A DNA stretch of 64,000 nt, from the NCBI GenBank assembly GCA_047495785.1, contig JBLDXI010000020.1, positions 1,674,001-1,738,000 of the forward strand. The letters are read 5' to 3'. The notes beneath the pieces are model-generated. The model ran no database searches, was not told the origin of the DNA, and saw only the letters and a program-made list of their open reading frames with translations. The stretch comes from Lepidodermella squamata (lineage: Eukaryota; Animalia; Gastrotricha). The position numbers were made by a program, and so were the translations under genes. Below, one piece after another: positions 42,772 to 62,803 of this stretch. The stretch's first letter is position 1. Each line of letters opens with the position of its first letter.

Positions 42772-44146
42772 CGCAATAACATTTCAAAACACCAAATTCC
42801 ACTTGACTCGCTCACTTTTTTTCTTGTTGTTGAGGCTTTTTTGCAACTGCTTTTTAAGATCTCGATGGCTTTCGAATTTCAATGGTGAAAACCGGTTTGA
42901 TCTTGCATGTCTTTTTGTCACACTACTATACTGCTTTTGTATCCTGTTATTGGGTATTTACGATTTTTTGGCTTTTTTGTGACCGGTTGATTCATCTCAG
43001 CTGCGTTCGATAATAATAATAAAAAATCGCCTGTTTCCATGCGTGGGTCTCTTCTTGTCCGAACGTGCCTGAAATTATTGCGATGATTATGTTATAGAGT
43101 CCCCATGGAGCGCGCCGCTCCAGCTTCAATAAGTGCCGATAAAGTGGGTTGTCGTGGTGACACTTTTTAGCGTAGAAAACTGTCATCGAAAATCGATTTT
43201 CCAGGTGCTTTATTTTTTGGCTGAGTCAACACAGACAGGACGCGGCCGGCGACAGCAACATTTTCAAGCATAGAAACCGAGAAGGGCAGCAACGAGTTTA
43301 TTCAAACAAATGAGAGGTGATTTCATTCTGATTAAAGAAATGGTGATGGTTCACCCCTATTGATGCCAAGGAACAATAATTAGAGCTCAAAATTTCATCT
43401 GGCTAAAAGTAATCAGTTGGATTATGGAGTGATTTGGCCTTAAAAAGTCAAAGGTGGTTAGGTAAGGACCCTGAGAGTGGGGAAAGGCGATCTAAAACTG
43501 TCAATTTATTCCCGTTCATATTAGGCGGGGTCCATCGAGCTGTCAGCGTCAGTGTCTCGCGAAACTAGGAATTTTCTAAATAATTTCCCCCTTCTTTATC
43601 TGGAAATGAGTTGTGTCGAGGTGCATTGTACGCATTCTTGTTATCGTTTTCTTGGTCTATTCAACGGCATGTCAACGTAACCCCGACTGTAGAAGCATGA
43701 CAAATCCTAGTAAAATCCTCCTTAATTTTTTTAATCACATTCATAATTGCGCTCACCTTTTTTACACTTAGAAAATTTGACACCTGTGAGCCTCAAATAA
43801 GAGGGCAGTACAGATACAGATTTTAGTAATTTTCCAAAAATTCAATTGTAATCTGATTTTGTCAATGTCGATTTTGCTTGAGCGTCTGAAAAACCAAAAA
43901 ACACGGCAAAATTGGGCTCAAAATTTTATTCGACTGTAAAAATCCGACACAGATCTGAGACCGGCTGTTTTAGCTGAGAAAAAAGTATTTGTATCACCAG
44001 TCACTCTCCAATGTTTCTTTGAGACAAAATTGAGAGAAAAGAAAAGAGAAACACAAGTTACGTCTAGGAAAAAAAATCGTCTAGAAATTAAGACTAGGAG
44101 TGAAATAATCGATGATCTCAGTCACTTGGCTCGACGATGGAGAAAT

Positions 44147-47100
44147 TCAGTTATCGGCTCCGCATCGCACTCGCTTGTGCTCCTCGCTGAGCGATTCCAA
44201 AGCACCGGGTGACGCGCTTCGCTTCCGCGTCTGCTTCGCAGCGCCGTCCTCCTCTTCGATATCTTCGCCCTTCAACGCAGCCATGACCGACTTCTTCGCG
44301 GCTTTCAGCATCGCCGCAGTGTCCGGGACTTCGACCGGCTTGCGTTCCATCGCCAGCGCGGCCGTGATGTTGACGTCCAGGGTGTAGGCGTTGGTCAACA
44401 GCTTTGAGCAGTGCATGGATTCGGGTTGGAGATCGGCGCAACCGGCGACCAGCAGCAACTTGCAGTGCGTCGTCTGCTCGCCTTCGCTGGTCGACGAAAT
44501 CGGCAGCAGAATTGATCCACTGCGCGCCTCAGGCCAACCGGCCGCGCCGTCAAGGCAGTACCATCCATTCGACGGATTTTCTAATAAAGAAATCAAAATT
44601 TCAATTTTCAAAAAAGTGTTATTAGCTTATTTCGGTTTCCTGATATAATTTTAGGCAGAATGCTCAAAGTTTTCAAGAACTTAGCAATGATCTTTCAAAG
44701 TTTCTGAAATTGACGTAGTGAACGTAATGAGCTTCGGCTCGACATTGAAAGGAAACGTTTCACCGTCATTCTCCTTAGAAAAGCTGCAGATTCTCTCGTT
44801 TTGGCGCTCTCAAGTTTAACAGCAAACAAAACCTCTTTCATCAGGCATCTTTAGATAGCAAAAACCTTTATATGGAAAAAAACCTTGATGACTTTCTTGG
44901 CAATAGCAAGGAAGTTCGAAAAACTACTACGAAAAAACTCTCATTGGTACCAGGACGCCCTTTACGCTCGATTTATGATCTTAAGCCACTCCCATGGCTG
45001 CGATTCATTAGTGTTTTTTTTTCTTTTGACCTCTTTGCCGAGCTGACGCTGAAGACAACATCATCTTGTAGATAAGGGAAATCGCCTTCAATCACAAGAC
45101 TGATCGGTGAGTACAGCAATTCGAAAAATTCGTCCAACAAGCGAAAATTGATATCAAAACTGTTAAAGAGTCGAAGATTGGAACGCGCCTGGTGGTCGCG
45201 CCTGCCTTTCACGGCTGAAGCCCCTGGTCACCGACTGGCAGCCGGGCGTCGTGCGATCTAGTAATTTACTCTTGTTTTTTTTGTTGCTTTTTGATTGCTA
45301 AATTTTTTCAGCTGGGTCAGAGGCGGCCTGTCGAGGCGCGCGAGGACCGTGTAACCTATGCCCCCCCCCCTGCTTGCTGCTCCTGCTGTTGTCCCTTCTC
45401 CCGCTGCGAACCGCCAAAACCCGTGCTGCCCGAGCAACCGCGGCGGCAAGGAGAAGGACGCGAGACTGGAGGCCTTCCTGCGTAATTATTGATCAAGTTG
45501 ATCTTTTTCACTCTTTCTCTCATCTCTTATTTTGTATAGGCCATTGGCATCGAAGCGCAGAAGGCCGCCGTCTACGCGTCCCTCTTATTTTCCTTAATCA
45601 CTTGCGCGGGTTTCGTCATTCGTTCAATTCGCTGGTGCGTGGTGCGCAAGCGCAATGCCGCTGCGCTGCGCGATTTGGCGAGCGAAGGCGTGAGGGCAGG
45701 CGCTAAAGCTGTTGCCGATCTGGCAGCGCAGTTCAACCGGAGTCTCTTCTCAACCGGCTGAATGTGTCGACCGTTACTAACGCGGCCGTGCTCAGCTCCA
45801 CCGTCATCGATGTGGCTGGAGGCGCCGATCAGACGAGCAATTCCGAACCTGGCCCAGCCGAGCCGTCAAACACTCCGGCGCAAAACACTCGACAGAAAAA
45901 GGCCGCTGTGAAGCCAAAGTAAAGAACGAAGAAAAACTCGAATATTTTGTTTGATTCAGGCATCCGAACATCCGCTCGCAGTATGCAACACGCCAAATCA
46001 CCTCAATATGCACCATCAACGTCATGAATCTGCAGGCTACACGTGGTTTCAGGGTAAGACTGCAAAGCTTTTTAAGCAATCGATTCTATAGCTTCCTTTT
46101 ACATCAGTTTGGAAGAAAATGCAGCGACACACTCTAAAATCTAAATATCTCAAAATCAAAACTGTAGATTCCGATTTTAGCAATGTCTATACCAGACTTG
46201 AGATCAAACGGAAACCAGCTGTGACTGAAACTTGGAACTCAATAGATTTCTCAATTTTTCATCCAACTCAAATGTTCAAGATTTTTCAAATTTTTGAATA
46301 ATTATCCCGCTTCGATTTGACATGAGTTTGAACCACATTCGTATTTCTCGAAAAAAATCGACTTACCTAGGTCAAACATCCACAGGTCTTTCAGCTCGGC
46401 GTCGTTTTCATTTCGCCCACCAAACACGAAAAGCCAGCGATGTTGGCACACGCAGACCGACATGTACGACCGAATTTCAGGCCAAGGTTGCGCGAGGGCC
46501 GCCGCCTTCTCCTTGCTCTCCATCTCAGCCTGGGTCGTCTTCTTACGAATCGCCTCCAAATTCCGCTTGACCTGCTCGGCAATATCGTCGTTCGCCTCTT
46601 CCTTCTTCGAGTTGCCGTTCGAGCCCTCCTCCTTAACGCCTTCTCCCTCTTCCTTTTCAACCTCTTCGTCGTCGAGGCTCTCGCCCTCACCCTCGTCGTC
46701 ATCGTCCTCCTCATCCTCGTCACACTCGCCATCATCCACGTCATACGCGGTCCATTTTCGGGTCTTGGTGTCGAAAATCGACAAATCATTCGTCCGACCA
46801 TCGGTGTCACGGCCTCCGAAAATCAAAACCTGGTGGTTGCCAGTCTTCGCCGTGTACATAGTCGCGCCATGGGCGGCGCGAGGGGTCGGCGAGTCCAGGT
46901 TCAACTGCATCGGTTTCTTCACATCGTACAACCCGTCCGGGTTCGGCGTGGCGTTGATGCAGTACAGGTCGTCGAACCAGGTCAAACGGAGCGGGTCTTG
47001 CTTCTCGCCGGCCTCTTCCTTCTTCTCACCATCCGGTCCACCGTCCTCGACGTCCTCATCCTCGTCGTCGTCTTCGTCGTGAATTCCGCCGGCTGGCACC

Positions 47101-49260
47101 GGGCCGAACCCGCCGAATAGCCACAAGTGGGTGCCGGATGGCGTGGTGACTGCGGTTAAGGTGGCTTTGTCGCGCGGGGTCGGAATCGGGGTTCCGACTG
47201 GCGGTTTTTCTTCGCCGTTTGCAGCGGCTTCAGGGCTGGATTTGGCAGCCGTGAACTCGCTCTTCTTCCATGGACCGTTAGCTAAAAATGAAGAACAATA
47301 AATGCATTTTGGGTTCAAATTTATCTCAAAATAATTTCCAGCTCTTAAAAAAAATTCTTTTGAAAGAAGACAGCGGTCGGAACTAATAGCTTATCGGAAA
47401 GCCTCTTCAACACGTTCAACAAGTTTTAAGGATTTTTTCATCTACACCACTATCTTGTATATTCAAGCGCATGATTCACTGGAACTAGGTCTGGAACCTT
47501 AGCATCACTCCGAGACGCAAAACGAAAAGCCCCTTGCCCAGCCTCATTAACATTCGTTTCGTGCTGCAGGCCTCAGGGCTTTCTCATCCATATTCATAGC
47601 ATCGAGACTTGGCCAAGCGAGTAAAAGCCGTGCGATCGCCATTGAAGGATCAGGACGAGCTGCTCGGAACTACGTCGTTCGAGGCAACTGCGGCGAAGCT
47701 GAACCCTATTAGTCGCAGATCTGACCTATAGTACGAGGGCCGGCCTTTTCAAGAAAGCTGATACGATTGCTACAATTACCAGCAAAGTAAGATCGCAGCT
47801 CGAGGCGCTACGCGGCGACACCCTAACCGCCGTGAAGACCCACTACTGAGGAATTCGCCTATCCCGGAAAGTATTGATTAATCCAACTGTACATTGTGCA
47901 ATTACTTCTCTAGACCAAGCAGACTCACAGTCGATTAAGTTCATAGTAAGCCAACGTTTGGATCGTCCGACAGTTATTTGTCTTATTTACATCAACAACG
48001 TGATCGTTTCATCAATCAAGACCAATTGAATCCAAGTCAATGGGAGGCATTATCTACCTCGTCGCAGCTCCTAACCGCAACTTGTCGCACGACGCGATCG
48101 ACTCCGAAGTCTTCATCCGGGGAAATGGCCCAAGACGCATGGCTTGAAATTAATGCTGAGCTTTCGCTTGTACCAACTTATCACAAACAAAAACACAATT
48201 CTAACGGATATCAAACAATCAGCAAATCCTGTCTACATTGTTTTGCAGCAAAAAAGAAGACAGCGTGTAATAGGCGATGAAGTCTGGAATTTACTACTGA
48301 CTCGTCTTCGGAAAATGTCAGACAAGACAATCGATACTTGTAATCCTGAAGCAGACTACTACCCAATCGTTTATGTACGAAATGAGACACGTTCGAAGCT
48401 GAACAACGCTAAATTACGACAAGTTAGCCAACTATACTACAAGACAGGAACGAAGAAATGTCAATTATGATTTTGGCTGACGTGAAAGTTAGCAGCAGAA
48501 ACCCGACATTAGATGTAGAACGCGAAACGATATTCAACCTATGACAACCGATGGCCAACTCCAACGCGTTGACCGTAATCGTTGCCTTTTGTGCCCGAAA
48601 GCCTGGGACCCGAATGAAGAAATGGACAAGTGGACGCAATGCTCCAGGTGCCAATGTTCAAAAACTGATTTGATTGAAGACTGAAAATGCGTACCTCCAC
48701 TCTACATTGCGATAACCACGATGCCAAATCTCGTGCCTTAGAACCTTATTTCAATTAATTTTTGTTACGTAGCTCTGGTGAGTACTTCATTATCGATCAA
48801 GAAAATAGGGTAAAAATTTAGATTTAAGAGGCTTAAATTTATGGCTGGAAACTCAATTTTAGTGGTAAAACCCTCTTGGAATGAAAAGAAGCTCACGTAG
48901 TTGGTAGGTCCAGAAGTCGTTAAGCCACGCCTCGGAGTGATTGAAACCACCAAACATGAACAGACGATCGCCGGCGATAGCCAAGCTGGCGCCAGATCGT
49001 GGGGAGGGGCATTCCGCGCTAGTCGCTAGCGCCGTGACTTCATTAGTCGACGGCTTGAAAACGTACAATTCGTTAGTTTCCTGATAGTCGTCATCAGCCG
49101 AGCCAGATTTCTTGATCAAACCGCCGAAAATGTACACGGTATCAGCCTCGCCAGCAGCATTCGTGCTGTAGCAGTGGGCGAAACCTTCACGGGCGAGGTG
49201 TTCGTTGTTTTTGAAGTCAACCGTCGTGCAGGCGACAGGACTAGCAGAATCCGTGGTCAT
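44147..49260 (-). CDS. Kelch-domain protein, KLHDC1/2-like; exons 49260-48897, 47281-46367, 44580-44147
   Basis: Kelch motifs PSPRSGA, PTPRDK...LFGGFG and PTPRAAH...IFGGR...RTNDL; acidic loop insertions; basic C-terminal NLS-like segment. Confidence 0.8.
44975..45761 (+). CDS. Putative nested antisense gene (about 184 aa, two hydrophobic segments); exons 44975-45010, 45072-45106, 45169-45260, 45312-45481, 45540-45761
   Basis: Four GT-AG introns of 51-62 nt join into one stop-free frame; exons GC-rich, introns AT-rich. Confidence 0.45.
47460..48740 (+). mobile_element. Probable decayed retroelement-like sequence in the Kelch-gene intron
   Basis: Coding-like composition with broken ORFs (47978-48280, 48144-48470) and no splice pattern; family not identified. 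Confidence 0.3.
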
Positions 49261-49427
49261 TTTCATGATGAAATAAATTATCAAATCGTCGGAACCTAAC
49301 AAAGCAGAATATTTAATTTAAAATCGAAGTCACAGATATAGCAGATATTAATCACAACTAAAGACAAAAAATCAGCAGAATAACGAAAAATTATGTAAAA
49401 ATTTAAGGCAGTTCAATTAGAATAGTT

Positions 49428-52286
49428 TCACAGATCAGCGAGAAGATCACGTTCGTCTGAAGTGTTTGCCGCAATTTTAGCAGCTGGTTTCGGCTGGTCG
49501 CTATGGCCATTTCCGTTCGAAGCCGGGTGATATTCGCCGATTTTTCCGCACTTTTTGCGAATCGCCTCGACAAACTCATCGGCCTCTTTCGACGAAGCGG
49601 CGCCATCGCCTCGGCATTCGTCAGACGTGACTAGACCGTCGCCGGTTTGCACGAGACGAGCGAAAAACTCGATGCAATTCAGTCGCTGGAGTAAATTTTG
49701 AACGGCTTCATTGTAAATCCCAGGCTTTTTACGCTCTATACAGTATCGACGCAATAAATTGAGGCAGTTGAGGCACTTTTCGTAGTCAGCTGAACCAAGA
49801 CCAGTTCCGAGAATCGTGTAAATGACTTGAACCAACATATCGCATACTGAAAAAATCGCAAAAATTAATTAAGGAGGATTTTACGATTTAATACTCACTT
49901 TCTTCAAAAGACCTAGCTCCCTCTCGAACAAGGTCCATGAAATCCTGAACAGGATTTTCATTTGTGATAATCGCTCTAGGCCCATTTGAGGTGGATGAAG
50001 TTGAAGCGGCTACATTGTTGAAATGGCCAAGATTGGTGAAATCACCCAGGGTGGGTGCCGCCGGGTCTTCCGGACCCGCTGACGGCTCCTGCTCCATCGC
50101 ATATTTCCGGTCGACCAGATCGAACAAGCTCGCAACGTTCTGAGCAGCTTCATCACGCCGCTGAACCATCGCCTCGTCCTGTAACTGCAACGTATCGACC
50201 GCAGTTGGCAGGGGGATATTCATATCCGGGTGCAAGATTCTCTGCCGAATAACCCGCATTACGTGCTGGAAATACGGGTCTACCGTTTCTTCAGGGTTTA
50301 AAGGCTCTTCCCACGTGCCAGTTGGTAACATCGCTGCTTCGATCAAATTAGCAACAGCATTGAGTTGATCCTCGTTCGGACGAAACGTGTTTTGTTTTAC
50401 CATTTCAGGTGTCATGTTTTCTCTGGGCGTGTTGATCAACTGGTCCAAAACTTGCCCAGCGGGTAGGTTCGAAAATGTATACATCGAAACTTCGTCCGTA
50501 AACGGCAAGTCGACGTAATACAACGCGTCGTTTTCGTCGCTTTCCTCGTCTTTTTTCTCTCCGTCTTTTTCTTTAGGTGGATGCGGAATCAAAGCGGCGA
50601 GTCGTGGTGCCGACGCCCTGTTGTAGCATTTTCGAACAATGGCAACGTAGCCCAATTTTCTCAGAGCCCGAACAAGGGCGGCAAAACGAACTGCGGTGGC
50701 CTATTTAAAACCGTTATTCGAAATAAAAATAAAATAAAATAAAACTTACATGACCACCCACTGTATCGGCCAACACCACTTGATTACCCTCGTTCATGAA
50801 CAAATGAGGGTCAACGTCTTCAATCGGGCAAAAATGAACTAGTTTGAGGCTCTGAATTGGAGGAAAATCTATTTTTTTCAATTTCAATTAAAATCGACAA
50901 ACTTTTTCATTCGCCAAACCAGTTTTCAGAGCGGTTTCGATAGCCTCAGTCGCATGAACTGGCGTGTTTCCGTAAAGAAATGCCCTCAACAACCCGTCTT
51001 CAGTGACTTTTTCGTCATTATCCGCCTTCCGAAATTCAACATAACGCTGGACATTTGCCGAAGAACTCGCTGCCCCAGTCGAAGTAGACGGTTCATCACC
51101 AGACGCCTGGTTTTTGTTACCAGCCCCGTTTTTCTGATTAGCAGCAGCTGCTAGAACGGTACCGTCAGCCATCGTCCAAGACTTTTTCGGGATTTTCTTA
51201 TTTTTGCCAAAAGCTTGGATAGGAATTGAGAGCCCGGGGGCGATCTCGAGTGAAACCTTCCATGCCATGGGATTCACCTTTTTAGGCCTCATGATTTGTA
51301 AGGAGGCTAAAGCCTCAGCAAACGTGTAAGATTCTCCTATAATAAAAAATTTCAAATATTTTTCAACATTAAATTTTGCTAAAATTACGCATACCGTTTG
51401 TCTTTATAGCTATTTCATTAGCCATTATCTCAGCGGCAATTCGCTTTTTGTCCTTCCTTTTACCGCGAGGCCTTTGATTATCTTCGTTGTTACGCCCATC
51501 AGAAGTGCTAGGATCGGTCTTGCTTTGCGAACCCTGGCTGTCTTGATCAGGAAGCTGCGACACGTCAAATCCACTAGAAGACAATACATAGAAAAAATTA
51601 CCTTATATTTCGAAAACTTACACGAATTTAACGTCAATGCCAGCGTCAACCAAGCTTTTAATGGTGCCGTCCTTCAGCTTATCAGTTAATTCAGTGCCAC
51701 CAGCCAAGTTTGAGAACACAAAAATCGACGTTTCGGAAAAGGCGCTCTTTCGGCTCCTAAATAGCGAGGAAAATTTCAGCTAAAAGGTAGAAAATTTACT
51801 AATTTACCCTGCATTTATAGCTAGATGATCGGCAGCGACAACTATTGCTTCCATAACTGAATGAAAAAATTGTTTTATCAAAGCTTGAATCCAAATATAG
51901 TTGCTTACAATCTCCAGTATTGAACGTTGTATCAAGGCCTTCGGCCATTTCGCAAACATTCCAATTAGCAGCGCCCAGTTCGTATTTCACCGTGATATGC
52001 TGATAGAAATTGGGGTCATCAGTATTCAACCTGTTATCAGATGTTGTATCGCCAAAAAGAATTAGCGCAATTTCATCTTTCGATTCGTTGAAAATCTTGA
52101 GGAAAAAATCGAAAAATTAAGATATTAGGTTAAATTAAGGATGAGTTTTCTTACTTTTCTCTCGATAAAAGAAATAACAGCGCGTCTGGCTGAAATCATC
52201 GCCGTACCTCCTTCTGGCAGTTCTTCATTCATATGAGGCCCCAAATCAACCACCAGAACTATGGCAGCTTTTGGAGCTGGCGCCAT
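49428..52286 (-). CDS. XRCC5: Ku80 (NHEJ); multi-exon
   Basis: vWA start KAAIVLVVDLG, SKDEIALILFG, YVDLPFTDEV, DPYFQH, NPVQDF and C-terminal DERDLLADL resembling the DNA-PKcs-binding tail. Confidence 0.92.
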
Positions 52287-52388
52287 TTTGTAGGCAACTA
52301 AATACTAATAAGCTATAAACGAGAAAATTTATTCATTAGTTAGGTTCGCCTGGAAAATTGACTTGGAACACGCGAGGGCGGACTATTT

Positions 52389-53161
52389 TTACTTTCGGTA
52401 ATTAACCCAATCTTTAAGGCGCGTGAGAGCTTCTTCTTCCTTAGTTGTGAGCTTATCGCCTTCGAAAGGCAGGAAAGTGAAAAGACCACTTGAGAACAGA
52501 GAGTCGCGATCCATCTTGGCTAGATGAGCATTTTGCTTGTGCACATATTCGACGGCGTGAGCGAGATGAGCAGCGTCCATCGGCCGCATTTCGAACAAAT
52601 TGCGCCATAAAGCGCCGGCGAGAACGCGGTCGTTGCTCAAAACACCTTCATCGTAACCGAGCAGAGATGCGCCGAAATGAAACGTGATTGTCCGAAACTC
52701 GCGCTTTTTCACAGCAGATTGTAACTTGAAGAGAAAAAATCCAAATTTTGATAAATAATTGTTTATTTTTGACATTAATACCCTAGCTAGCTTTTTGATT
52801 CGAGCTTCAACATCTTCCCACATCATTTCCACCATTCTTTCTTTCGTGAATTTGCCCTCGGCACCTTCTGGCGAAAGGCGAGTCATTACCATCCACAGGT
52901 GAAGTTCTAGCACCAAAAACCACGAGAAAAACGTGTCTGGCATTTGATATTCTGCAGAAAAATAAATACATAATTTTCTTCTAATTTTTTCAAAAATTTA
53001 CGTTTGAAAAACGCGTCGTAATCGACAGTTTCCGCACAGCTGAGATACATATTGATAGCAGCTTTCTTCATTTTTTGTTGAGGGTAGCTGAGGATGGGCG
53101 CGACACCGAAATGAGGCACAACAAAATTGTACATCTGCTTCAGCTTCAAAAATCGACTCAT
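52389..53161 (-). CDS. UQCC1: Ubiquinol-cytochrome c reductase assembly factor 1 (Cbp3 family); 3 exons
   Basis: MPDTFFSWFLVLELHLWM...MWEDVE...GYDEGVLSNDRVLAGALWRNLF. Confidence 0.92.
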
Positions 53162-53455
53162 TTTTAATGTGAAAATGACTAGAAAATCGAACAAATAAAA
53201 AATCAAAATTTTTATTAGCGATTACACAACGGCTTGAAGAGCTGATGGAATGTACAAATGCTTCATACCCCGTCCGACCAAATAAAAACTAGAGTTGCGA
53301 TACAAATTCCCGCTTCAAAAATATTCCGCACAGGACTAGGGCGATGAAGCAATCCGCAGGGAAAAAAACGCGAAAAAAAGAAACAAGATTTTGGAAGAAT
53401 TTCACAGTGAGCAATTTTAGGTAGCAAGATCCAGTTAACACACCGGCGCCATCAT

Positions 53456-54317
53456 TTATTTGGCAGCTGGTTTCGATTTTTCGCCACTTTTCGGTTCAGA
53501 CTTCGGCTTGGTTGGTTTGCTTTCGGTCGGTGTTGCGGGGGCTTTCTTACCGCCTGATTTTCCGCCCTTTTTCTTCTGTGGCTTTCCTTCGTCCTTCTTA
53601 TCACCACTACCTTCCAAGGCCAACTTGGCTTGCCAGGCCGCGTGGTCTTGTTCGAATTTCTTTTTCGCATCAGCCTCAACTTGACGGTACTTTTGCTTCT
53701 GCTCTTCAGGCAGAGCTCGCCACTCAGCCATCAAATTTTTTACGAAATCAGTCACCTTTTGAGCACCTCGGTTCGCCCAGCGCTCTTTCATGAACAAAAG
53801 CGGGGCGTTCAGCGGGCGGATCGGACGACCAGTTGCCCGCCATTGCTTGCGGCGCTGGCGAATCGCGCGCGAGTGGCGCTTCTTCTGTGACAAAGCGACC
53901 AAATTAGACCGTTGCTCCTCAGTGAGTTGCTTCATTTCACTTTCGTAGCGCTGCTTCTCGCCCTGGGCGGCCTCGACGAGACGTTTCTTCTCGTCCTGCG
54001 GCAATTTCGCGTACAAATCGCTGGCCATTCTCATGACATCGGTCGCTTTCGAGGCCGGGTGTTCGCTTTTCAGTTTGCTGTAATGCGACTGCATGAATAC
54101 AGCGAAAGGCGTGAGGGGACGGCGAACTTTCGGTAAATCGGTCGAGCTCTTTGGAGGAACAGGTTTGTGACTGTAATTCAACGAAAAATTACGCGGCTGA
54201 AGCTTATAACTTATATTACCTTTGGGTGCTTGAAGCGGTAGCCGATTGAGAAGTTGTCATCAACCGAGTCGAAATTCGGCACATCCTTGAAAATGCAGCT
54301 TGCAGTGACAAAGACAT
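53456..54317 (-). CDS. TFAM: Mitochondrial transcription factor A (two HMG boxes); 2 exons
   Basis: Mitochondrial presequence-like exon 1 (MSLSLQAAFSRMCRISTRLM), HMG boxes RRPLTPFAVF and RPIRPLNAPLLF, basic tail. Confidence 0.85.
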
Positions 54318-54570
54318 GGTCAATATCAAAGAAAATTAACAGCTAAAAATCAGAATATTTCACGTTAAAATTACAATCGTTTTCTTTGATTTTTATTCAA
54401 CAATAGCTTCTTCTGAAGGCACAAAGACATAGATCTTAGAGCGGGTAAATATCTCAAATGAGCAACAACTTTTTCTTTGATAAATCTGCATTTTTATCTT
54501 TTATATATATTGCTTGAAATATATAAGCATCCACACCTCGGGAAAGTGAGCAGTAGATTATTTCTAAAGT

Positions 54571-56973
54571 TTATGCAGCAAATTGTTTCTTGGTGATAAC
54601 AACCGGTGGCAGTTGAGCTTTGAACTCGCCGGATGGAAGTTCGGCCACAAATAACTCCCCGGGTAAAAATTCATCCTCCTCGCCATTGCTGTTACTCGCT
54701 CCCACCTCCTTCAAACAATCGAACGATAAAATGTAACGAAACCGGCCGGAATGTTGAATGGCAAAATGATCTGAGCCGTGTCTTTTCGCGCCCGGTTGGA
54801 ACAAAGGCCCGTCGATTCGCATTGGCACCGGCGCGCTCTTGTCGATAGTCGCTAGTAATCGACTGCTTGATGTCAGAATTTTCGATTTCGACGCATCCGC
54901 ATACCCTACCCAGTCGATTGTTTCTTGCTGGTTCAACCACGCACTCGGGTAAGCATTCGGTATATCAACCTCTCCGAGTTCCTCTTTCACTCTCATTTCT
55001 TCGGGTATTTCAACGAATTTATTCTCCGCTTTGTCATACTTTGCCTTTTTAGCCTTAGTTTTCACCTTGAAAGCATCGGCAAAGGTTTTGCGGGTCCAAT
55101 CGGTGTATTTCAGTTTGTTCCCATCGAATTCGGCAACTCGCCGGTCACTGAAGGCGACTAAAATCTGGCGATTCGCGTTAACAGACACCGCGGTGATTAA
55201 CCCTTTGTCGTAGGTTGGAAGACGGCAGATCGGCTCGAAGGAAAACAACTCTTCATCAGTTTCATCGATAGTCAATTTGTACAGTCGCACGACATTACGG
55301 CTTGCGATTGCTACGCAATACGAGTTCTCCGCGGCGTCTTTCGCTATTTTCAGAAATAGAACGGGGAACGAGTTCGAATCAGTTCCGGCATTTTCTGAAT
55401 TGAAGTCTTTGGCGAGGCGGAACGTTTGCGACTGTTCTGGCGACCAAAGCGATCTGACAACAAGCTGAGCATCGGCTGATAATGCTAAAATCGGCGATTT
55501 CGACGGTTCATCGCAAAAAGCAATAGCTGAGACCGAAGGTGCCGGATATTTACGTTTCGATGGCTCGAAACTTATCGTGAAATGCTTGGCAGCTGACGGA
55601 GTTGCAATGTCAAGTTTAAAAACACGAACAATAGAGCCGGCAGAAAAGGCCACGAAATTCGCAAGAGGGGACAGCTTGACTATTTGAGGAGGTAGATAAC
55701 ATGGCATGGTAATCGCTAATTGCCGATTAGGTTCACTCTTTTGATCGGTTTTGTTGGACTCGTCTTCCATTTCGTAGTCTTTGGGCGTGGCAAGGAGCTG
55801 CCATATCTCGACTGAATGACCACCGTCTTTCGACTGGTGTGAAAACGCCGCGACTGATTGGCTTGATGAAACGCGCTCCGCAGAGACCAGGTTGCTAAAA
55901 CTATGAACAGGCATGATCCGGCAAGCAAAATACGCCCTGTCCTTTACTTTGTTAGAGACAACTGAATAAATTCGCCAACCAATTATTGACCGATCAAGAC
56001 CGGCAGTGAGCAGCATATCAGGTGAAATGAAGCAACTTGCCCTCACATCTCGCTCGTGGTCTTTATGAATTTCAGAAGTCAACCACGAATTGACACTGGT
56101 TAACTCATTCTCTGATGTGGGATAGATACTCACAACCGTAGGATCAGCACCAGCTGCAAAAATGATGGGTGGATGGCCTTCGATTCCCTCTCCAACAGAC
56201 AGCGTTAGCACGTCGAGACTGTGAGTCGATAGTTCGGTTATCATTGTGCCGTTTTTGGCATTCCAAATTGTGACAATTCCACGAGAATCGCTGCTAGCAA
56301 AGATGGCATGCTGGCAAGGGTATGCTACCAGTGACCATACAATCACCTTTTGGGGCAGTGACAGCTGCCAACAAATCTTCGGACGAGACCCAGACATCTT
56401 CCAAACATGAATTGAACCAATTCCGCCAGATACCAAGTATTTATTGTCAGGCAGCCAAGCCAAGCTGAGGACACGACCTGAATCATGGCGAAGCGGCGGA
56501 CCAGATAGTTCAAGAGTGTTTTCGGGCGATGTCGTGCAGTCAACTGAAACTAAATTAACGAGGTGAATGTTACCAGAGTCGCTACCACACGCAAGTATGC
56601 CACAGCCAGTTTCAGGGGATGTAGCAGCGGCCAGCGACCAGATAGAGCTAGAATCAAGCGTCAGAGACCGGCGAACCGCCAATCGTTCCAGGTCGTACTC
56701 CACAACTGATCCGCTGACACCGGTTGAAAACAACCGTCCGTTATGCCATGCCAACGCCTCAATGCTAGTCGGTCCATCTTCAGCTGCCAAGAATGGAGGC
56801 AAAGTGAAATCGAGGACAAATTTTACTCCATTAGGGCTGTAACGATACACCTCTAAGGAACTATTACTGCGGGAAACTGCCAATCTGCCACTGAGGGCAT
56901 CGTAGACCATGCAATGGATGGGATGAGTGGCCGGCCGGAAGAATCTTACGTGTTGCACCGCAAATTGACTCAT
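54571..56973 (-). CDS. UTP4: U3 snoRNA-associated protein 4 (cirhin), WD40, intronless
   Basis: VQHVRFF...IHCM...RLAVSRSNSSLEVY, SIEALAW, GRLFSTG, VWSL, DSRG.V.IW, H.RDVRA and C-terminal QLPPVVITKKQF. Confidence 0.9.
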   Translation of the reverse strand: MSQFAVQHVRFFRPATHPIHCMVYDALSGRLAVSRSNSSLEVYRYSPNGVKFVLDFTLPPFLAAEDGPTSIEALAWHNGRLFSTGVSGSVVEYDLERLAVRRSLTLDSSSIWSLAAATSPETGCGILACGSDSGNIHLVNLVSVDCTTSPENTLELSGPPLRHDSGRVLSLAWLPDNKYLVSGGIGSIHVWKMSGSRPKICWQLSLPQKVIVWSLVAYPCQHAIFASSDSRGIVTIWNAKNGTMITELSTHSLDVLTLSVGEGIEGHPPIIFAAGADPTVVSIYPTSENELTSVNSWLTSEIHKDHERDVRASCFISPDMLLTAGLDRSIIGWRIYSVVSNKVKDRAYFACRIMPVHSFSNLVSAERVSSSQSVAAFSHQSKDGGHSVEIWQLLATPKDYEMEDESNKTDQKSEPNRQLAITMPCYLPPQIVKLSPLANFVAFSAGSIVRVFKLDIATPSAAKHFTISFEPSKRKYPAPSVSAIAFCDEPSKSPILALSADAQLVVRSLWSPEQSQTFRLAKDFNSENAGTDSNSFPVLFLKIAKDAAENSYCVAIASRNVVRLYKLTIDETDEELFSFEPICRLPTYDKGLITAVSVNANRQILVAFSDRRVAEFDGNKLKYTDWTRKTFADAFKVKTKAKKAKYDKAENKFVEIPEEMRVKEELGEVDIPNAYPSAWLNQQETIDWVGYADASKSKILTSSSRLLATIDKSAPVPMRIDGPLFQPGAKRHGSDHFAIQHSGRFRYILSFDCLKEVGASNSNGEEDEFLPGELFVAELPSGEFKAQLPPVVITKKQFAA

Positions 56974-57421
56974 AATAGCATGAATTCAAACAAATAAAAC
57001 TGCTTCTATTACATAAAAATCGCAAATCAAATGGGGCCGCATAAAAAATGCTACTCCGAATTCAGAGATTCAAGCTGTTTCAGTGCGGGATACAAGATAG
57101 AAAATTACATTCAAAGAACAATTCCTAATTCTGTGCCAAGGCTCCAGCAGTCATCCATATTATTGCCCTCTGGTCTTTTCAATCAGCATCGATTTCAGAG
57201 TTGGCTAGTTCTTGCGCGAGAAACCGCGTGGGTTCGGACTTGATCGAAGAAAACCCGCCAAATCGAAATTCGATTTTCTATACAACTTTTATTGCAAAAA
57301 ATTAAGCAAGCTCTACAAACTCTATTTTTTAAATTAAAATTTGTTTGATGTGATGGAAAACCGCCGAAATTCAAATTATGGGAGAATGCCGTCCACTTTT
57401 TCGACACAACTTGCTTTCTAG

Positions 57422-57936
57422 CAGTGTGGTCCAAATGCAGACTCCCGAGTCTTTTAGACTCTTTCTGAGATTTTGCAGACTCCCGAGCGTTTTTCGGTTA
57501 AAATCAGGTGAGGCTCCGAATAGACTCCCGTGGATGGCTACCCAAGGCTCGAGCAGACTCCTTGCATATTTAGACTCCGACGAAGGGTGATAAACAGCGT
57601 TTTCAGGTCATTTTCAGGGGCGTAAACAGCTGGTTGTTTTGGTTGTTCAAAGAACTACCAAAATGAAGTCTCAAAAACCCCTCTTCGGCCTATAAAATGG
57701 CTTAAATTGCTTATAAAATGGACGAAATGTTGGCAAAGTTGTCAAAAAATTGCTCGCTTCGCTCGAAATCCAGACATTTTCAATATTTTCTATTGAAAAT
57801 GTTTCTTTTTTTTGCCTTTAGAAACTAAAAAATTAGCATTTATTAACGAAGTGAGACAAAATACACTGTGGAGACTCCGCCAACGATTGCAGACTCCGAC
57901 CACAGACTCATTTATTTTCGGGCTTGGACCACACTG
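57422..57936. mobile_element. hAT-type MITE (515 bp) with perfect 13-bp TIRs and 8-bp TSD
   Basis: CAGTGTGGTCCAA...TTGGACCACACTG flanked by CTTTCTAG at 57414-57421 and 57937-57944; repeated subterminal AGACTC(C) motifs. Confidence 0.9.
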
Positions 57937-58435
57937 CTTTCTAGGACGGCGTCGTGCGTCTGAATTGCCAATAGCCAAGTGCCAAATGCCGTCCTCAACC
58001 CTCATCCTTCCGCCTTCCGTTTTACGTTTTCTTGCAAATTAAATGATGAATCAGCTGTAAGGTGGGGAATCAGAATTTGAGGTAGCACACGAAACAAAAG
58101 GGCATACTTACTCGACATGAGACAGAAACCATCTTGAACCATGCCATAGCCCATTGTCTTCTTTCACTCAGCAATCAGGAAATCAAGAAATCCAGTGCGA
58201 TGTAAAACTAATCGCATAGAGTTCGCATTTGGAACCCGGAACCCGTTACCGATTGCCGCTAGTGGAGTGCTACATTTACTCACTACCTGACTTCTCTTCG
58301 AGCTTCGCATATTCGATATGAAAAATGCAGCACAACATTTTCGCCTGCTGTTAATCTTATCTTAAGATTTAATTACTTTAGTAAGTATCTGATTATATCT
58401 CGACTTGCGTCTTCGCTTTTTGCATATCCACCTTT

Positions 58436-58538: not shown

Positions 58539-61154
58539 ATGTCCAAGGAAGCTGAAGCCATCGACGAAGAAGGTTTCGTTTTTCCATTTCCACCATATCC
58601 AGGTCAAGTTGAGTTCTGTCATACTCTCTACGATGCTGCTGTGGATCATAAACTCGCTATCTTGGAAAGCCCAACGGGCACGGGAAAATCTATGGCAATC
58701 ATTGCTTCGGCATTGAGATGGCTAACCGATTCTGAAACCAAATTTCGTCAAGAAGTTGATAAATTAAAGGAGCAAGATGCCAAACTAGCTGAGGCGGACG
58801 ACTGGCTAGCCGTTGCTGATCAGCGTCGTAAACTGCAGGATGCTATTTCCGACGTAGAAGTAATAACGAAGTGGTTGGATGAATCTGATAAGTTGGCTCG
58901 TGAATCTCGTTCAAAATTGATTGAACTGGAGTCAAATTTAAAGATGAAATCCGGAGTTAATATTGCATTCGAAGATGTGAACGCTTTGAAAGAAGAATCG
59001 AAAACCCGCAAGACAGAAGCGGATACTGAGCTCATCGGCAGCTCATCGGAGGAAGAAGGAGACGAAAATGACGACCCAGATGGCTTGACTCGGCGCAATG
59101 GCTCAGAAGCTCTGGATTTTCCAGCAATCCCCCAGATCATTTATGCTAGCCGAACTCACAGCCAACTGAGTCAATTTGTAAGCGAAATGTCACGTCACCC
59201 AACCAAAGTGCGTGCAATTTCATTAGGAGCTCGTCAACTGCTATGCATTAACGAAAACGTTCGATCAAACAATTCATCCAGCTGGCTCGTGAATGACAGA
59301 TGTGCCGAGTTGAGAAAACGCAAAGGTGACAAGGGCTGCAAGTTCTACAACAAACAGCGTATCACGGCTCTTTCAAACGGCTTGCTCGGCCAAATCACTG
59401 ACATTGAAGAGTTGGTGAGTCGAGGCCGATCAGCCTGTGCTTGCCCGTACTACGCAGCCCGTCGTGCTATTCCTCGAGCTCAGATTATGGTCGTTCCTTA
59501 CCCACTATTATTTCAATCTTCGGCTCGTGAATCTTCAGGCATTCGCTTGAAAGGATCTCTGGTCATAATCGACGAAGCTCATAACTTGTAATACTTGCTC
59601 AATTATTTTCTATGTGATACAATTTAACATTATTTCTCTCATAGACTTGAACATCTGGGTGACGCGCATGCTGCTCGTATTGATTTGAATCAATTACAAG
59701 CGGCTCAGCAGTTGCTATCAGCTTACTGGGACCGGTACGGCACTCGTTTAAATGCCGCTAACGCTCGAATGGTTCGTCAACTTTCGACCATGGTCGGTGC
59801 TCTGGTGGACCATCTCACTAATAAAAAGACGTCACAGCAAAAGTCGACAGTTTTCAAGGTTGAGGAGTTCGCTTTTTCTGCCGGGGCAGAGGCTATCAAT
59901 TTACCAGCTTTGGTTCGGTGGGCAAAAACAGTTCGGATCGGCCAAAAAGTTCGGTCATTCAGCTCGACCTTATTCTCATCTCTTGCGGCTGGCGATGATG
60001 AAATTGCGAAACAAAACAAGCCGAGCGAGAAGAAGGGAAAAGACCAGCCAGAACAGCCGCAAAGTTTCGGCCAAGCGTCTGCGTTGTGTCAAGTTCTTTC
60101 GTTTTTGGAAACCCTGGGAAATTTGCCAAATTCGCAAACTCGCGTTATTGTCACCGAAGCAAATGAAGTTGAAAAGCGCCCTGCTTCTATCCATGTTTTA
60201 CTCCTCGACCCAGCCTCTCAATTCGGTGCTATTCTTAAGGAAGCTCACAGCGTAGTTTTAGCCGGTGGAACAATGCAACCTGTCGGCGATTTGTTGGATC
60301 AACTGCGAAATTCAGTCCCTGATTTGAAAGTTGTCTGCAAACAATTCCCGCACGTGATCCCCAGCGATTCATTAATGGTTATTCCAGTCTCAAGCGGCCC
60401 TTCGGGGCAAAAGATGCGATTTACCTTCGCGGCTCGTCAAGATTCGTCCGCGTTGAAAGAAGCCGGAAAATCACTGGCTAGTTTGATGCCTCTTGTCCCT
60501 CATGGTTTTGTCGTTTTCTTCCCATCTTACGATTTACTTTCCACTGCGACTGAATTATGGAAGCAAGACGGTTCGTTGGAGCGGCTGGAAAAGAAGAAGA
60601 AAATCTTCATTGAGCCCCGCAATTCCCGTCATGGGATCGAGAAGTTTCTGGAAGAATACGGTGAAATGGCCACTTCAAGCCAAGGTGCTATTTTACTGGC
60701 TGTAATTGGCGGAAAGTTGAGCGAAGGCGTCAATTTATCCGACGATTTAGCCCGTGGTTTAGCCGTCATCGGAATGCCCTACCCATCACTCGCCTCCGTC
60801 GAGTTGCAGGAGAAATTGCGGTATCTCAGCGCGTTGAAGCCGGTTGAGACCGAGAGTGATGGCGAGACGGAAAAAGATCGAGGCCGTCGGTATTACACGT
60901 CGCTGTGTTGGCGGGCCATCAACCAAACAGTCGGGCGTTGCATCCGCCACGCCGGCGATCACGCTGTTGTGTACTTGTTCGACGAGCGTTACACCGCGAA
61001 ATCGGCCCTCGACTCGAATTTACCCCGCTGGATGGGTCCGTCGATTGTCCGCCCGGCTGAGGGCGTTGGTTCTGCCTCGTTCGGCATGGTCGTTTCTGCT
61101 ACTGCCAATTTTTTCAAAAAACGCCGCGCTGCCAAATTTTCTAACACTGAATAA
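58539..61154 (+). CDS. DDX11: Fe-S DNA helicase DDX11/ChlR1; 2 exons
   Basis: FPFPPYPGQ, ESPTGTGKS, YASRTHSQLSQFV, four Fe-S cysteines ending ACPYY, IIDEAHNL, GGTMQP, GGKLSEGVN, NQTVGRCIRH. Confidence 0.95.
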
Positions 61155-61245
61155 TTGACAAAAAATCTTGCATGATGATTTTTCCCCGAATTTTATCAAA
61201 TTTTTCTGATTTCTATTTTTTTCTGTTGTAGAGTTTTAATTGAAA

Positions 61246-62803
61246 ATGGAAGCAGTTCTCGAAGAAGCTCTGAAGGGCTTTGTAACGGATGTTTTGTCGT
61301 CTGACAGGCCTTGCTCGGAACTTTCTTTGAAAATCTTCTTCATTTTCAAAACGATCGTATCCAACCACGATCATATCGACGTAAGTCCGCCTTAATTTTT
61401 CGTACATATTCAACTCCGAATTTTTTATTAAGGAGGAGCAAATATTTAACCTAGTGAAGACGCATTTAGTGAGTGTGGCTGATATCAAGTCGCAGTTGGC
61501 TCAGCAGGACTCATCGTCATCGAAGTGCATTCAAATTCTACGCGGTCAAATACTCATCCGGCTTTTCTTCATTTGGGTCGCTCGCGACTGCTTGAAAAAA
61601 GGCGTCGACATAACAGATGAGGTCGTTAAACTCTGTGAAATGTTCTGCATTAGAACCGACCCGCTTCAATTAAACGCTTTCCTATCAGATACAGTCATGA
61701 AAATGTAAAATATTCAATAATTTAAGGAGGATTTTTTAACTAGTTTATTTCCAGGTTTGTTGACCATATTCCCGATATTTTGGCGCAAATTTTCGACGAA
61801 TTTTTGCTGCCGATTCCGAAAGAGTTGGCGGCAGCGACTGGAAATGAGGACGGCTATGACGAGGATGAAATGAGTTCGAACCGCAGCCCAACTGCTGACA
61901 GTTCGAAAGAGCAGTCGTTCGACGATTCGAACGGCAAACGCCGGTCACGTGACAACAAACCGCCGCGTTTCATCATGTCCCCGATCAAAAACATCGACTC
62001 GAATTCACGCAATGCTGCGAATAGCGGCAATCGATTCGGCAAACGACCTAGTCGGCAAATTCTAGTCGCTGCTCGATCGACGGCTGAAAACGACAAAAGC
62101 GCCGGGGGTAGTGCGAAAATTCGGAGTAAACAAATTTCCGTTGCCATAGCAACGAGTAAAAATTCGAACAGTGCCGATCGGAGGATCAGCGCTAGGTCGC
62201 AGTCGTTTGACCATGTCGGCGTTAGTATGAGGCAGGCTACGCAGCGGCAATCAACCGCGCCTGTTGCGCCGCAGAATTCGACGTCGGCCGTTCGGCGATG
62301 CTTATTCGGCACGGAATCGGCGAAAAATGACGCGATTTCAATGCTGAAGCCTGGCTTCACAACGCCGAGGAAACGCTCGGCCGCTGCTTTGACGTCAGTG
62401 GCCGACACCCCGCCCATGGATGCGAAGAAGCAATACCGACTACCACCAACGACCCCGTTATCGAAAATCAACCATGAAAATCAGCAAAATGATGTGATGA
62501 AGTCGCCGAGTTTTCCTAAGCCTGATTCATTGCCGTTTCGGGTTGTTACAACCCCGTTGAGGCAACTTCAATTGCAACAGGCGGTTATGAGATCGCCAAT
62601 GGCGCCCGGTACGATTTTGGTGCCTCAGTCGCCGGATGACAGTAAAGCGGGTATTACCGCTCGTTCGTTCTATGCGAAGCAAAACGGACCGCCCCAATCG
62701 GTTGTTCAGGCTACGAAAAAGAACCTGTTGTCGAGCGCGAATCGGAGAACGATGAGTAGCTACGACCTGAGCGCTGGTCCGTCAACTCAAGCTTCAAACA
62801 ACG
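61246..62803 (+). CDS. TICRR: Treslin/TICRR (Sld3 orthologue)-like, N-terminally short; exons 61246-61380, 61433-61704, 61755-62803; 3' end probably lies beyond the window
   Basis: QILIRL...DEVVKLCEMFCIRTDPLQLNAFLSD...FVDHIPDILAQIFDEFLLPIPKELA matches the Sld3/Treslin domain; RQI, VRRCLF, SVADTP, VPQSP and RSFY motifs occur in Treslin order. Confidence 0.75.

What the first reader, a model, noticed from the sequence alone, without database searches (positions are those of the whole stretch)
44147..56973. Five-gene operon-like run (UTP4-TFAM-UQCC1-Ku80-KLHDC) with poly(A) signals coupled to unpaired splice acceptors
Seen in sequence: five minus-strand genes lie head-to-tail with stop-to-ATG gaps of about 250, 295, 100 and 170 bp. 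Each junction has the same layout: AATAAA or ATTAAA, a U-rich tract, an AG acceptor with no evident partner donor, a short AT-rich leader and the ATG. Signal/acceptor positions are 54392/54343, 53211/53179, 52328/52313 and 49312/49296, so the acceptor is 15-50 nt after the signal, about where cleavage would occur. Established knowledge: this matches SL trans-spliced operons, and the near-zero spacer resembles Ciona operons and C. elegans SL1-type operons rather than C. elegans SL2 operons with roughly 100-nt spacers. Inference: one polycistron in which trans-splicing may itself define the upstream 3' end, possibly in a lineage where operons are undescribed.
Basis: partly seen in the sequence, partly recalled or inferred. 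Interest (0 to 1): 0.88.

Follow-up and report, generated by a model that had tools for sequence, protein, structure and literature searches.

The report
Spliced-leader operon of five housekeeping genes
Five unrelated housekeeping genes in a tiny invertebrate (very likely a gastrotrich) are packed so tightly, and one is capped with a foreign short leader so close to its neighbour's tail site, that they are probably copied as one RNA and cut apart, as in nematode and sea-squirt operons but in a phylum where this is unreported.

Summary
The layout is real. Five minus-strand genes (UTP4, TFAM-like, UQCC1, Ku80, Kelch/KLHDC) have stop-to-ATG gaps of 253, 294, 102 and 161 nt. Each gap has AATAAA or ATTAAA and a Y-tract+AG at the stated coordinates.

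Public cDNA contigs confirm nine 48-59 nt introns. They also show two decisive ends at the TFAM/UQCC1 junction:
- A poly(A) tail on TFAM at 53196, 15 nt after AATAAA.
- A 21-nt non-genomic leader (GATTGAATATTAAATTTTCTG, plus the shared AG) joined to UQCC1 exactly at the predicted acceptor, 53180/53179.

That leaves about 17 nt between the two messages, with no room for a promoter. The leader is not encoded anywhere in the 64-kb window.

A distant relative (51-59% protein identity, metagenome contigs) keeps all five genes in the same order and strand. Its gaps are 92-150 nt, with an acceptor before every ATG, and synteny stops right after the last gene.

Not shown: leaders at the other three junctions, a polycistronic precursor, and the SL RNA gene. 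The idea that trans-splicing itself makes the upstream 3' end fails at the one junction tested.

The genome is very likely Lepidodermella squamata (Gastrotricha). I found no report of SL operons there. The scan had already noted this signature on other pieces of the same genome.

The parts
56974..57400 (.). Candidate bidirectional promoter region between UTP4 (minus strand) and a DEAD_2 helicase (plus strand). It holds E2F-like TTTGGCGG at 57262 and weak AGs at 57007/06 and 57001/00 before the UTP4 ATG.
   Evidence: Sequence read. It shares more 8-mers with the relative's 410-bp divergent gap than shuffles do (18 against 5.2, 2 of 300 shuffles reached 18). The internal gaps show no such excess. 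This is weak evidence and the promoter role is inferred.
54571..56973 (-). Gene 1: UTP4/cirhin-like WD40 protein, single exon, 800 aa.
   Evidence: ORF, WD40 families, named UTP4 hits and a 51%-identical orthologue in the relative.
54343..54397 (-). Junction 1: AATAAA 54397-54392, U-rich tract, candidate trans-splice acceptor AG 54344/43, then a 25-nt leader to ATG 54317.
   Evidence: Sequence. It is the top-scoring AG of 14 in the gap. There is no RNA evidence: the X1 contig stops at about 54310.
53456..54317 (-). Gene 2: TFAM-like protein with two HMG boxes. Exon 1 is 54317-54220, the intron is 54219-54171, exon 2 is 54170-53456.
   Evidence: Intron joint seen in cDNA. HMG_box twice. Best solved-structure matches are TFAM across both boxes, E about 1e-10.
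53196..53216 (-). TFAM poly(A) signal AATAAA 53216-53211 and the observed poly(A) addition site at 53197/53196.
   Evidence: table 7: an X1 contig carries 20 T on the plus strand before 53196, which is a poly(A) tail in mRNA sense. X1 has no coverage from 53195 to 53139.
53179..53180 (-). RNA-verified trans-splice acceptor AG of UQCC1. The mature mRNA reads leader GATTGAATATTAAATTTTCTG(AG) followed by 53178 onward.
   Evidence: X3 record 15 (781 nt, both UQCC1 introns removed) has 21 non-genomic letters beyond 53180. The leader has no match in the window with up to 3 mismatches.
52389..53161 (-). Gene 3: UQCC1 (complex III assembly factor). Exons are 53161-53002, 52951-52782 and 52724-52389.
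   Evidence: Both introns confirmed in two independent cDNA sets, X1 and X3. Ubiq_cyt_C_chap. Named UQCC1 hits.
52313..52333 (-). Junction 3: AATAAA 52333-52328 and candidate acceptor AG 52314/13, only 13 nt apart. The UQCC1 cDNA contig ends at 52314.
   Evidence: Sequence. X3 record 15 ends at 52314. A contig end is not proof of an RNA end.
49428..52286 (-). Gene 4: Ku80, about 10 exons. Introns of 48-59 nt are confirmed at 52154-52096, 51908-51857, 51807-51757, 51621-51574, 51394-51337, 50902-50852 and 49898-49847.
   Evidence: Joints and loose ends. Ku domain. The relative's orthologue has Ku_N, Ku and Ku_PK_bind.
49296..49359 (-). Junction 4: two candidate acceptors, AG 49359/58 (stronger Y-tract, upstream of the signal) and AG 49297/96 (14 nt after ATTAAA 49317-49312). 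ATG is at 49266.
   Evidence: Sequence, scores. There is no cDNA coverage of 49342-49156 in X1.
44147..49266 (-). Gene 5: Kelch-repeat KLHDC-like protein. Exons are about 49266-48896, 47281-46367 and 44580-44147, with two unusually long introns (1.6 and 1.8 kb).
   Evidence: Kelch families. Colinear tblastx to the relative's compact orthologue. Splice sites read. This gene model is not confirmed by RNA.
43925..43930 (-). AATAAA about 215 nt after the KLHDC stop, the likely 3' end of the run. The next ORFs downstream lie on the plus strand (convergent).
   Evidence: Sequence, ORF list. The relative's synteny also ends here.

Best explanation
This is a five-gene polycistronic transcription unit (an animal operon).

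Proposed mechanism: RNA polymerase II starts in the bidirectional promoter gap upstream of UTP4 and runs through UTP4, TFAM-like, UQCC1, Ku80 and KLHDC. At each junction the precursor is processed twice within a few tens of nucleotides. Cleavage and polyadenylation occur about 15 nt after an AAUAAA or AUUAAA. A short capped spliced leader (at least 23 nt, ...GAUUGAAUAUUAAAUUUUCUGAG) is then trans-spliced onto an AG 0-30 nt further on. The U-rich tract between the two sites probably serves both as the downstream element for the polyadenylation machinery and as the polypyrimidine tract of the acceptor.

Shown: the gene layout; the introns; the TFAM poly(A) site; the leader on UQCC1 at the predicted AG; deep conservation of order, strand and tight spacing.

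Inferred: transcription as a single RNA; leaders on TFAM, Ku80 and KLHDC; the single promoter; the dual use of the U-tract.
For: 2; that leader is absent from all 64 kb of the window on both strands, allowing up to 3 mismatches. It is therefore not a nearby cis exon.
3; the TFAM mRNA (X1, a different study) has its poly(A) tail at 53196. Only about 17 nt separate the two mature mRNAs, which is too little for an independent promoter between them.
4; a relative with only 51-59% protein identity and unalignable intergenic DNA keeps all five genes in the same order and strand. Its gaps are 120, about 150, 92 and 96 nt.
5; every ATG in the relative is preceded by a Y-tract+AG at 13-42 nt.
6; synteny ends immediately after KLHDC, so the conserved block stops where the run stops.
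7; short-motif conservation is enriched upstream of UTP4 but not in gaps 1, 3 and 4.
8. The genes are housekeeping types (ribosome biogenesis, mitochondrial, DNA repair), the classes typical of nematode operons. This last point rests on my own knowledge.
Against: 1. The leader was seen on one gene, in one contig, in one run.
2. No RNA spanning any junction was seen. Contigs could not prove a precursor in any case.
3. No SL RNA gene with a GU donor and Sm site was found.
4. In nematodes most SL-trans-spliced genes are monocistronic, so a leader alone does not prove an operon. A promoter buried in the upstream gene's 3' UTR is not excluded.
5. The acceptor scores are modest and junction 4 has two candidate AGs.
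6. The last 9-10 nt of the leader (ATTTTCTGAG) resemble the genomic ATTTTCT-AG at the acceptor with a one-base offset. I take this as chance in T-rich sequence, and a DNA contig of the same species (X2) matches the window there. It remains a caveat.
7. There is only one comparator species, so the background rate of synteny loss in this lineage is unknown.
Confidence: 0.7

Rival explanations
1. The genes are tightly packed but independently transcribed. Each has its own promoter embedded in the upstream gene's 3' UTR or coding end, produces a short outron, and is SL trans-spliced as a monocistronic RNA. A mixed form is also possible, with the run split into two or three smaller units by internal promoters.
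For: Gaps 1 and 2 are 253 and 294 nt from stop to ATG, enough to hold a compact promoter that overlaps the 3' UTR. No precursor spanning a junction was observed. Gap 2 shows a marginal excess of 8-mers shared with the relative (9 against 3.5, 17 of 300 shuffles reached 9). In C. elegans most SL1 trans-spliced genes are not in operons and some operons have internal promoters (my own knowledge).
Against: The TFAM poly(A) site and the UQCC1 acceptor are about 17 nt apart. In the relative, stop-to-ATG gaps shrink to 92-150 nt including both UTRs. Order and strand of all five genes are kept at 51-59% protein identity, and synteny breaks right after the run. Gaps 1, 3 and 4 show no conserved motifs.
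Confidence: 0.22
2. The leader is an artefact or a cis exon: either a chimeric assembly contig, a strain-specific sequence variant just upstream of UQCC1, or a non-coding first exon encoded outside the window. In that case the cluster is simply a compact region of the genome.
For: The leader rests on one contig from one run. Its 3' end resembles the genomic Y-tract with a one-base shift. The leader string is absent from the literature searched. The metagenome scan gave only chance matches.
Against: The junction falls exactly at the AG predicted beforehand. The contig is a mature, fully spliced mRNA that ends 21 nt beyond the junction, as expected for a short capped leader. A DNA contig of the same species (X2, 52177-53740) is colinear with the window through this site. 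There is no copy within 49 kb upstream or 11 kb downstream. Earlier follow-ups on other pieces of this genome also report a leader at predicted acceptors (s1-421510, s1-374160; I did not check these).
Confidence: 0.05
3. [quoted passage not shown]
For: At junctions 3 and 4 the hexamer lies only 13-14 nt before the AG, so the expected cleavage point coincides with the acceptor. The UQCC1 cDNA contig ends at 52314, inside the AG. The Ciona precedent is in PMC1488885.
Against: At junction 2, the only one with a visible tail, poly(A) starts at 53196, 15 nt after a canonical AATAAA and 15-16 nt before the AG. The UQCC1 contig stops at the A, one base short of the ...AG end this model predicts. Canonical hexamers are present at all four junctions, whereas most Ciona and Oikopleura upstream cistrons lack them.
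Confidence: 0.12

Closest known systems
Oikopleura dioica SL-resolved operons
   Same: The genome is compact with tiny introns. A single short intercistronic spacer separates the upstream 3' end from the trans-splice acceptor: 23-30 nt in Oikopleura (as cited in PMC1488885) and about 17 nt measured here at TFAM/UQCC1.
   Different: Oikopleura upstream cistrons lack AAUAAA, whereas all four junctions here have AATAAA or ATTAAA. The leader sequence is unrelated, and the lineage is a protostome rather than a tunicate.
C. elegans SL1-type operons and Ciona intestinalis operons (no intercistronic DNA)
   Same: Junctions 3 and 4 place the acceptor 13-14 nt after the hexamer, so the poly(A) site and the acceptor should coincide. 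Canonical AAUAAA is present, as in the C. elegans SL1-type cases. If cleavage removes the acceptor, the upstream and downstream mRNAs would be mutually exclusive products of one precursor, as discussed for Ciona.
   Different: The one junction measured here has a real spacer of about 17 nt and an ordinary cleavage site. In Ciona the upstream mRNA ends in the acceptor AG and usually lacks AAUAAA. Neither feature is seen here.
C. elegans SL2-type operons
   Same: Same-strand housekeeping genes are co-transcribed from one upstream promoter and resolved by polyadenylation plus SL trans-splicing. Operon order is conserved between species.
   Different: The typical nematode spacer is about 100 nt with a Ur element and a specialised SL2. 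Here the spacer is 0-30 nt, and I have no evidence for a second, operon-specific leader in my data.
Flatworm SL trans-splicing (Schistosoma, Macrostomum)
   Same: Flatworms are the sister phylum of gastrotrichs in the Rouphozoa hypothesis, and they have SL trans-splicing and some operons (my own knowledge, and PMC8629364 listed).
   Different: Flatworm leaders are about 36 nt and end in AUG (my own knowledge). This leader is at least 23 nt and ends in GAG, more like nematode SL1 or the rotifer SL in length and ending. Homology is not testable from 23 nt.

Membership tests
SL trans-spliced operon (generic) | Two or more same-strand genes with very short intergenic distances | tested here: met
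   Stop-to-ATG gaps are 253, 294, 102 and 161 nt, and 92-150 nt in the relative.
SL trans-spliced operon (generic) | Downstream genes' mRNAs carry a non-genomic spliced leader at a 3' splice site | tested here: inconclusive
   Met for UQCC1, with a 21-nt leader at AG 53180/79. Not testable for TFAM, Ku80 and KLHDC because no contig reaches their 5' ends.
SL trans-spliced operon (generic) | The leader is common to many unrelated mRNAs | not testable with these tools
SL trans-spliced operon (generic) | An SL RNA gene with leader exon, GU donor and Sm-binding site | tested here: not met
   None in the window (Rfam gathering scan empty). The 19-mer scan of JGI metagenomes gave 15 chance hits with no matching context. 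Note s1-430863 reports an SL-RNA-like gene elsewhere.
SL trans-spliced operon (generic) | A polycistronic precursor RNA spanning gene junctions | not testable with these tools
   Only assembled contigs were available. X1 and X3 have no coverage across 53195-53181, 52313-52273 or 49342-49297. That fits efficient processing but is not proof.
SL trans-spliced operon (generic) | Upstream mRNA 3' end lies immediately upstream of the downstream acceptor, with no room for a promoter | tested here: met
   The TFAM poly(A) site is at 53196 and the UQCC1 acceptor at 53180/79, about 17 nt apart. This was measured at one junction only.
SL trans-spliced operon (generic) | Gene order and strand conserved beyond background synteny | tested here: met
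   All five genes are colinear in L003 at 51-59% protein identity, and synteny ends after KLHDC. There is only one comparator.
C. elegans SL2-type operon | Intercistronic region of about 100 nt with a Ur element and a dedicated SL2 | tested here: not met
   The measured spacer is about 17 nt. Hexamer-to-AG distances are 48, 31, 13 and 14 nt.
Ciona-type / SL1-type operon (no intercistronic DNA) | The upstream poly(A) site directly abuts, or is made by, the acceptor AG | tested here: inconclusive
   Not met at junction 2 (a 15-16 nt spacer before the AG). Possible at junctions 3 and 4 (13-14 nt hexamer-to-AG, and a contig end at 52314).

The most novel reading that the evidence does not exclude
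Gastrotrichs, a phylum with no reported SL trans-splicing, resolve conserved multi-gene operons with a roughly 23-nt leader. Within one operon they mix two junction types. Spaced junctions have ordinary cleavage about 15 nt before the acceptor. Zero-spacer junctions put the cleavage site on the acceptor AG, so one precursor molecule can yield either the upstream or the downstream mRNA but not both. That would act as a built-in switch between neighbouring genes.
Probability: 0.25. Interest if true: 0.7.

Novelty: new member of a known kind. Interest (0 to 1): 0.55.

Why it matters
SL trans-splicing and operons are scattered patchily across animals: nematodes, flatworms, tunicates, chaetognaths, rotifers, some crustaceans, cnidarians and ctenophores. 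Whether they arose many times or were lost many times is an old open question. A gastrotrich case would add a phylum next to flatworms, with a leader unlike the flatworm one. This locus gives a concrete, conserved five-gene operon with measured processing sites for testing how polyadenylation and trans-splicing are coupled when they lie 0-17 nt apart. It also matters practically: the published L. squamata assembly has no annotation, and gene prediction and 5'-end calling in this genome must allow for operons and leaders.

Tried and rejected
1. SL RNA gene in the window: the leader pattern with up to 3 mismatches gave 0 hits, and the Rfam gathering scan gave 0 hits.
2. SL gene in JGI metagenomes: the 19-mer gave 15 loci, but none had the upstream GATT context, and the one followed by GT was otherwise unrelated. 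All are chance matches.
3. Leader substrings in the open literature: 0 papers.
4. More transcript 5' ends through the protein collection. The exact UTP4 is not on record. No near-identical Logan-derived proteins exist for UTP4, TFAM or UQCC1, so no further cDNA contigs could be fetched.
6. Acceptor matrix from nine introns: it ranks the proposed AGs first in gaps 1-3, but it is over-fitted and weak. I do not rest the case on it.
7. TE or protein content in the two long KLHDC introns: no Pfam hits and no informative repeats.
8. Phylum assignment from protein hits. The best named hits are only 28% (UTP4) and 44% (UQCC1) identical and come from scattered phyla, so there is no phylogenetic signal. 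Identification rests on assembly statistics instead.
9. Cis-intron reading of gap 1: the only GT before AG 54343 after the hexamer would give an intron of about 32 nt, below the 48-59 nt range seen here. Rejected.

Full report
OBSERVATION.
The region holds five minus-strand genes lying head to tail.
- UTP4: 56973-54571, one exon, 800 aa.
- A TFAM-like protein with two HMG boxes: 54317-53456, one intron.
- UQCC1: 53161-52389, two introns.
- Ku80: 52286-49428, about nine introns.
- A Kelch/KLHDC protein: 49266-44147.

Identities rest on Pfam, named UTP4 and UQCC1 homologues, TFAM as the best solved-structure match across both boxes, and Ku_N+Ku+Ku_PK_bind in the relative's orthologue. Stop-to-ATG gaps are 253, 294, 102 and 161 nt. 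Hexamer-to-AG distances are 48, 31, 13 and 14 nt.

I built an acceptor matrix from the nine RNA-confirmed introns. It ranks the proposed AG first in gaps 1-3. In gap 4 it prefers a second AG at 49359/58, which lies upstream of the ATTAAA. On sequence statistics alone the pattern is suggestive, not compelling.

RNA EVIDENCE.
The one read-laying run (window 49100-55000) used Logan contigs of four public runs.
- X1 and X3 come from different studies and are cDNA. Their contigs lack nine introns of 48-59 nt with GT..AG on the minus strand. X1 also carries a SMART-oligo remnant at 53138 and a poly(A) tail.
- X2 behaves as DNA, with contigs running through introns and gaps.
- X4 gave only 18-21-nt chance matches.

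Two ends matter.

(a) X3 record 15 is a 781-nt, fully spliced UQCC1 mRNA. Its first 21 letters do not lie on the genome. In mRNA sense they read GATTGAATATTAAATTTTCTG, followed by AG (shared with the genomic acceptor 53180/79) and then 53178 onward. The junction is therefore exactly at the acceptor predicted from DNA. The leader has no match in the 64-kb window on either strand, even with three mismatches.

(b) An X1 contig of the TFAM 3' UTR ends at 53196 followed by 20 A in mRNA sense. That is 15 nt after AATAAA (53216-53211) and 15-16 nt before the UQCC1 AG.

The depth bookkeeping in table 2 shows that X1 has no coverage between 53195 and 53139. The same bookkeeping shows no cDNA coverage across 52313-52273 or across 49342-49297. 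So about 17 nt separate two mature mRNAs.

The same UQCC1 contig ends at 52314, the A of the proposed Ku80 acceptor and 14 nt after AATAAA. A contig end is only a hint of an RNA end. The contigs do not reach the 5' ends of TFAM (they stop near 54310), Ku80 (52272) or KLHDC, so those acceptors are untested.

COMPARATIVE EVIDENCE.
The only close homologues of UTP4 and the HMG protein in 5.8 billion proteins are unnamed proteins on ENA metagenome contigs, at 51% and 59% identity. Their contigs (L001-L003) carry the same neighbourhood: a divergent DEAD_2 helicase run, a 410-bp gap, then UTP4 > HMG > UQCC1 > Ku80 > Kelch on one strand. tblastx is colinear from window 62808 to 44168.

Gaps in the relative are 120, about 150, 92 and 96 nt. 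Each ATG, including UTP4's, is preceded by a pyrimidine tract and AG at 13-42 nt. Intergenic DNA is otherwise unalignable. Beyond the Kelch gene the relative has a different same-strand gene with no counterpart in the window, while the window has convergent plus-strand ORFs. The conserved block therefore ends where the run ends.

The 400 nt upstream of UTP4 share more 8-mers with the relative's divergent gap than shuffles do (18 against 5.2). Gaps 1, 3 and 4 show no such excess. This is weak, but it fits one shared promoter region. That region also contains an E2F-like TTTGGCGG.

MECHANISM.
The most likely reading is a single precursor transcribed from the bidirectional gap upstream of UTP4. 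It would be resolved at each junction by cleavage and polyadenylation about 15 nt after the hexamer and by SL trans-splicing at an AG 0-30 nt further on. The intervening U-tract plausibly serves both machineries; that part is inferred.

It is left open at junctions 3 and 4, where hexamer and AG are 13-14 nt apart. If cleavage there removes the acceptor, upstream and downstream mRNAs would be alternative products of one precursor, as argued for Ciona and for the C. elegans SL1-type operons (PMC1488885).

The main rival is independent promoters hidden in the upstream 3' UTRs with monocistronic trans-splicing. It cannot be excluded without TSS or precursor data. It is disfavoured by the 17-nt spacer, the 92-150-nt gaps in the relative, and the conserved order.

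COMPARISON WITH KNOWN SYSTEMS.
In spacing, junction 2 is closest to Oikopleura (23-30 nt). In having canonical AAUAAA it is unlike Oikopleura and Ciona and like C. elegans. It does not fit the SL2 type, which has a spacer of about 100 nt. The leader's length and its ...UGAG end recall nematode SL1 and the rotifer leader rather than the flatworm leaders of about 36 nt ending in AUG (my own knowledge). Homology cannot be judged from 23 nt.

ORGANISM AND NOVELTY.
The tools hide the source. Several lines point to one species.
- The scan index lists 1996 windows on 149 pieces for this genome, and the window is about 43% GC.
- The proteins have no close named relative in any phylum.
- An earlier follow-up guessed a gastrotrich (s1-421983).
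- The published Lepidodermella squamata assembly is 122 Mb in 157 contigs at 43% GC and is unannotated. It comes from a 2024 study that also sequenced a second organism (PMC11660948). That matches run X2 (2024), which shares its study with a different organism.

I take the genome to be L. squamata or a very close chaetonotid. This is an inference, at about 80%.

That paper never mentions operons, trans-splicing or introns. No open paper links gastrotrichs with spliced leaders or operons. The taxa that a 2021 methods paper names as having SL trans-splicing do not include gastrotrichs (PMC7986045).

The kind of system is well known, so I class this as a new member of a known kind. The scan had already flagged the same signature on other pieces of this genome (s1-421510, s1-374160, s1-368352, s1-365939, s1-379878). 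What this locus adds is a measured poly(A)-to-acceptor spacer and a five-gene conserved block.

LIMITS.
- One leader, in one contig.
- No SL RNA gene found.
- No precursor RNA seen.
- Only one comparator species.
- The leader's 3' end resembles the local Y-tract with a one-base shift. I consider this chance, because the X2 DNA contig is colinear with the window there.

Noticed in passing
window 58539-62820 (+): A second candidate operon lies divergent from UTP4. A DEAD_2/Helicase_C_2 helicase (stop at 61154) is followed after 91 nt by a Treslin_STD-like gene (ATG 61246). A long Y-tract plus AG (...ttttttctgttgtag) sits 14 nt before that ATG. The order is kept in the relative, L003.
   Followed up: partly
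window 57420-57945: A MITE-like insert of about 520 bp sits in the bidirectional promoter gap. It has terminal inverted repeats (CTAGAAAGCAGTGTGGTCCA / TGGACCACACTGCTAGAAAGCA) and many internal GGAGTCT repeats. It is absent from the relative, whose gap is only 410 bp.
   Followed up: no
window 48895-47282 and 46366-44581: The KLHDC gene has two introns of 1.6 and 1.8 kb at about 49-50% GC. The nine confirmed introns nearby are 48-59 nt, and the orthologous positions in the relative span about 55-150 nt. No Pfam hit in the intronic ORFs and no clear repeats. Content unexplained.
   Followed up: partly
window 63010-63130 and 63470-63680: Clusters of a roughly 20-nt unit (TTGGCAAGATGAAAAAAGAT and variants) occur in opposite orientations about 400 nt apart. 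This looks like a foldback or MITE-type element downstream of the Treslin-like gene.
   Followed up: no
window 51574-51625: A Ku80 intron shows two acceptor forms 3 nt apart in the X1 cDNA (joints 51573>51622 and 51573>51625 with ACA). This is NAGNAG-type alternative splicing or an allelic difference.
   Followed up: no
A Ku80 3' UTR cDNA contig reads through it to 49343.
   Followed up: partly
window 25202-26629 (-), 27758-29920 (+): Elsewhere in the window there is a single-exon tubulin-family gene (475 aa) and a BTB-BACK-Kelch gene (720 aa). They were used only to look for a taxonomic marker.
   Followed up: no
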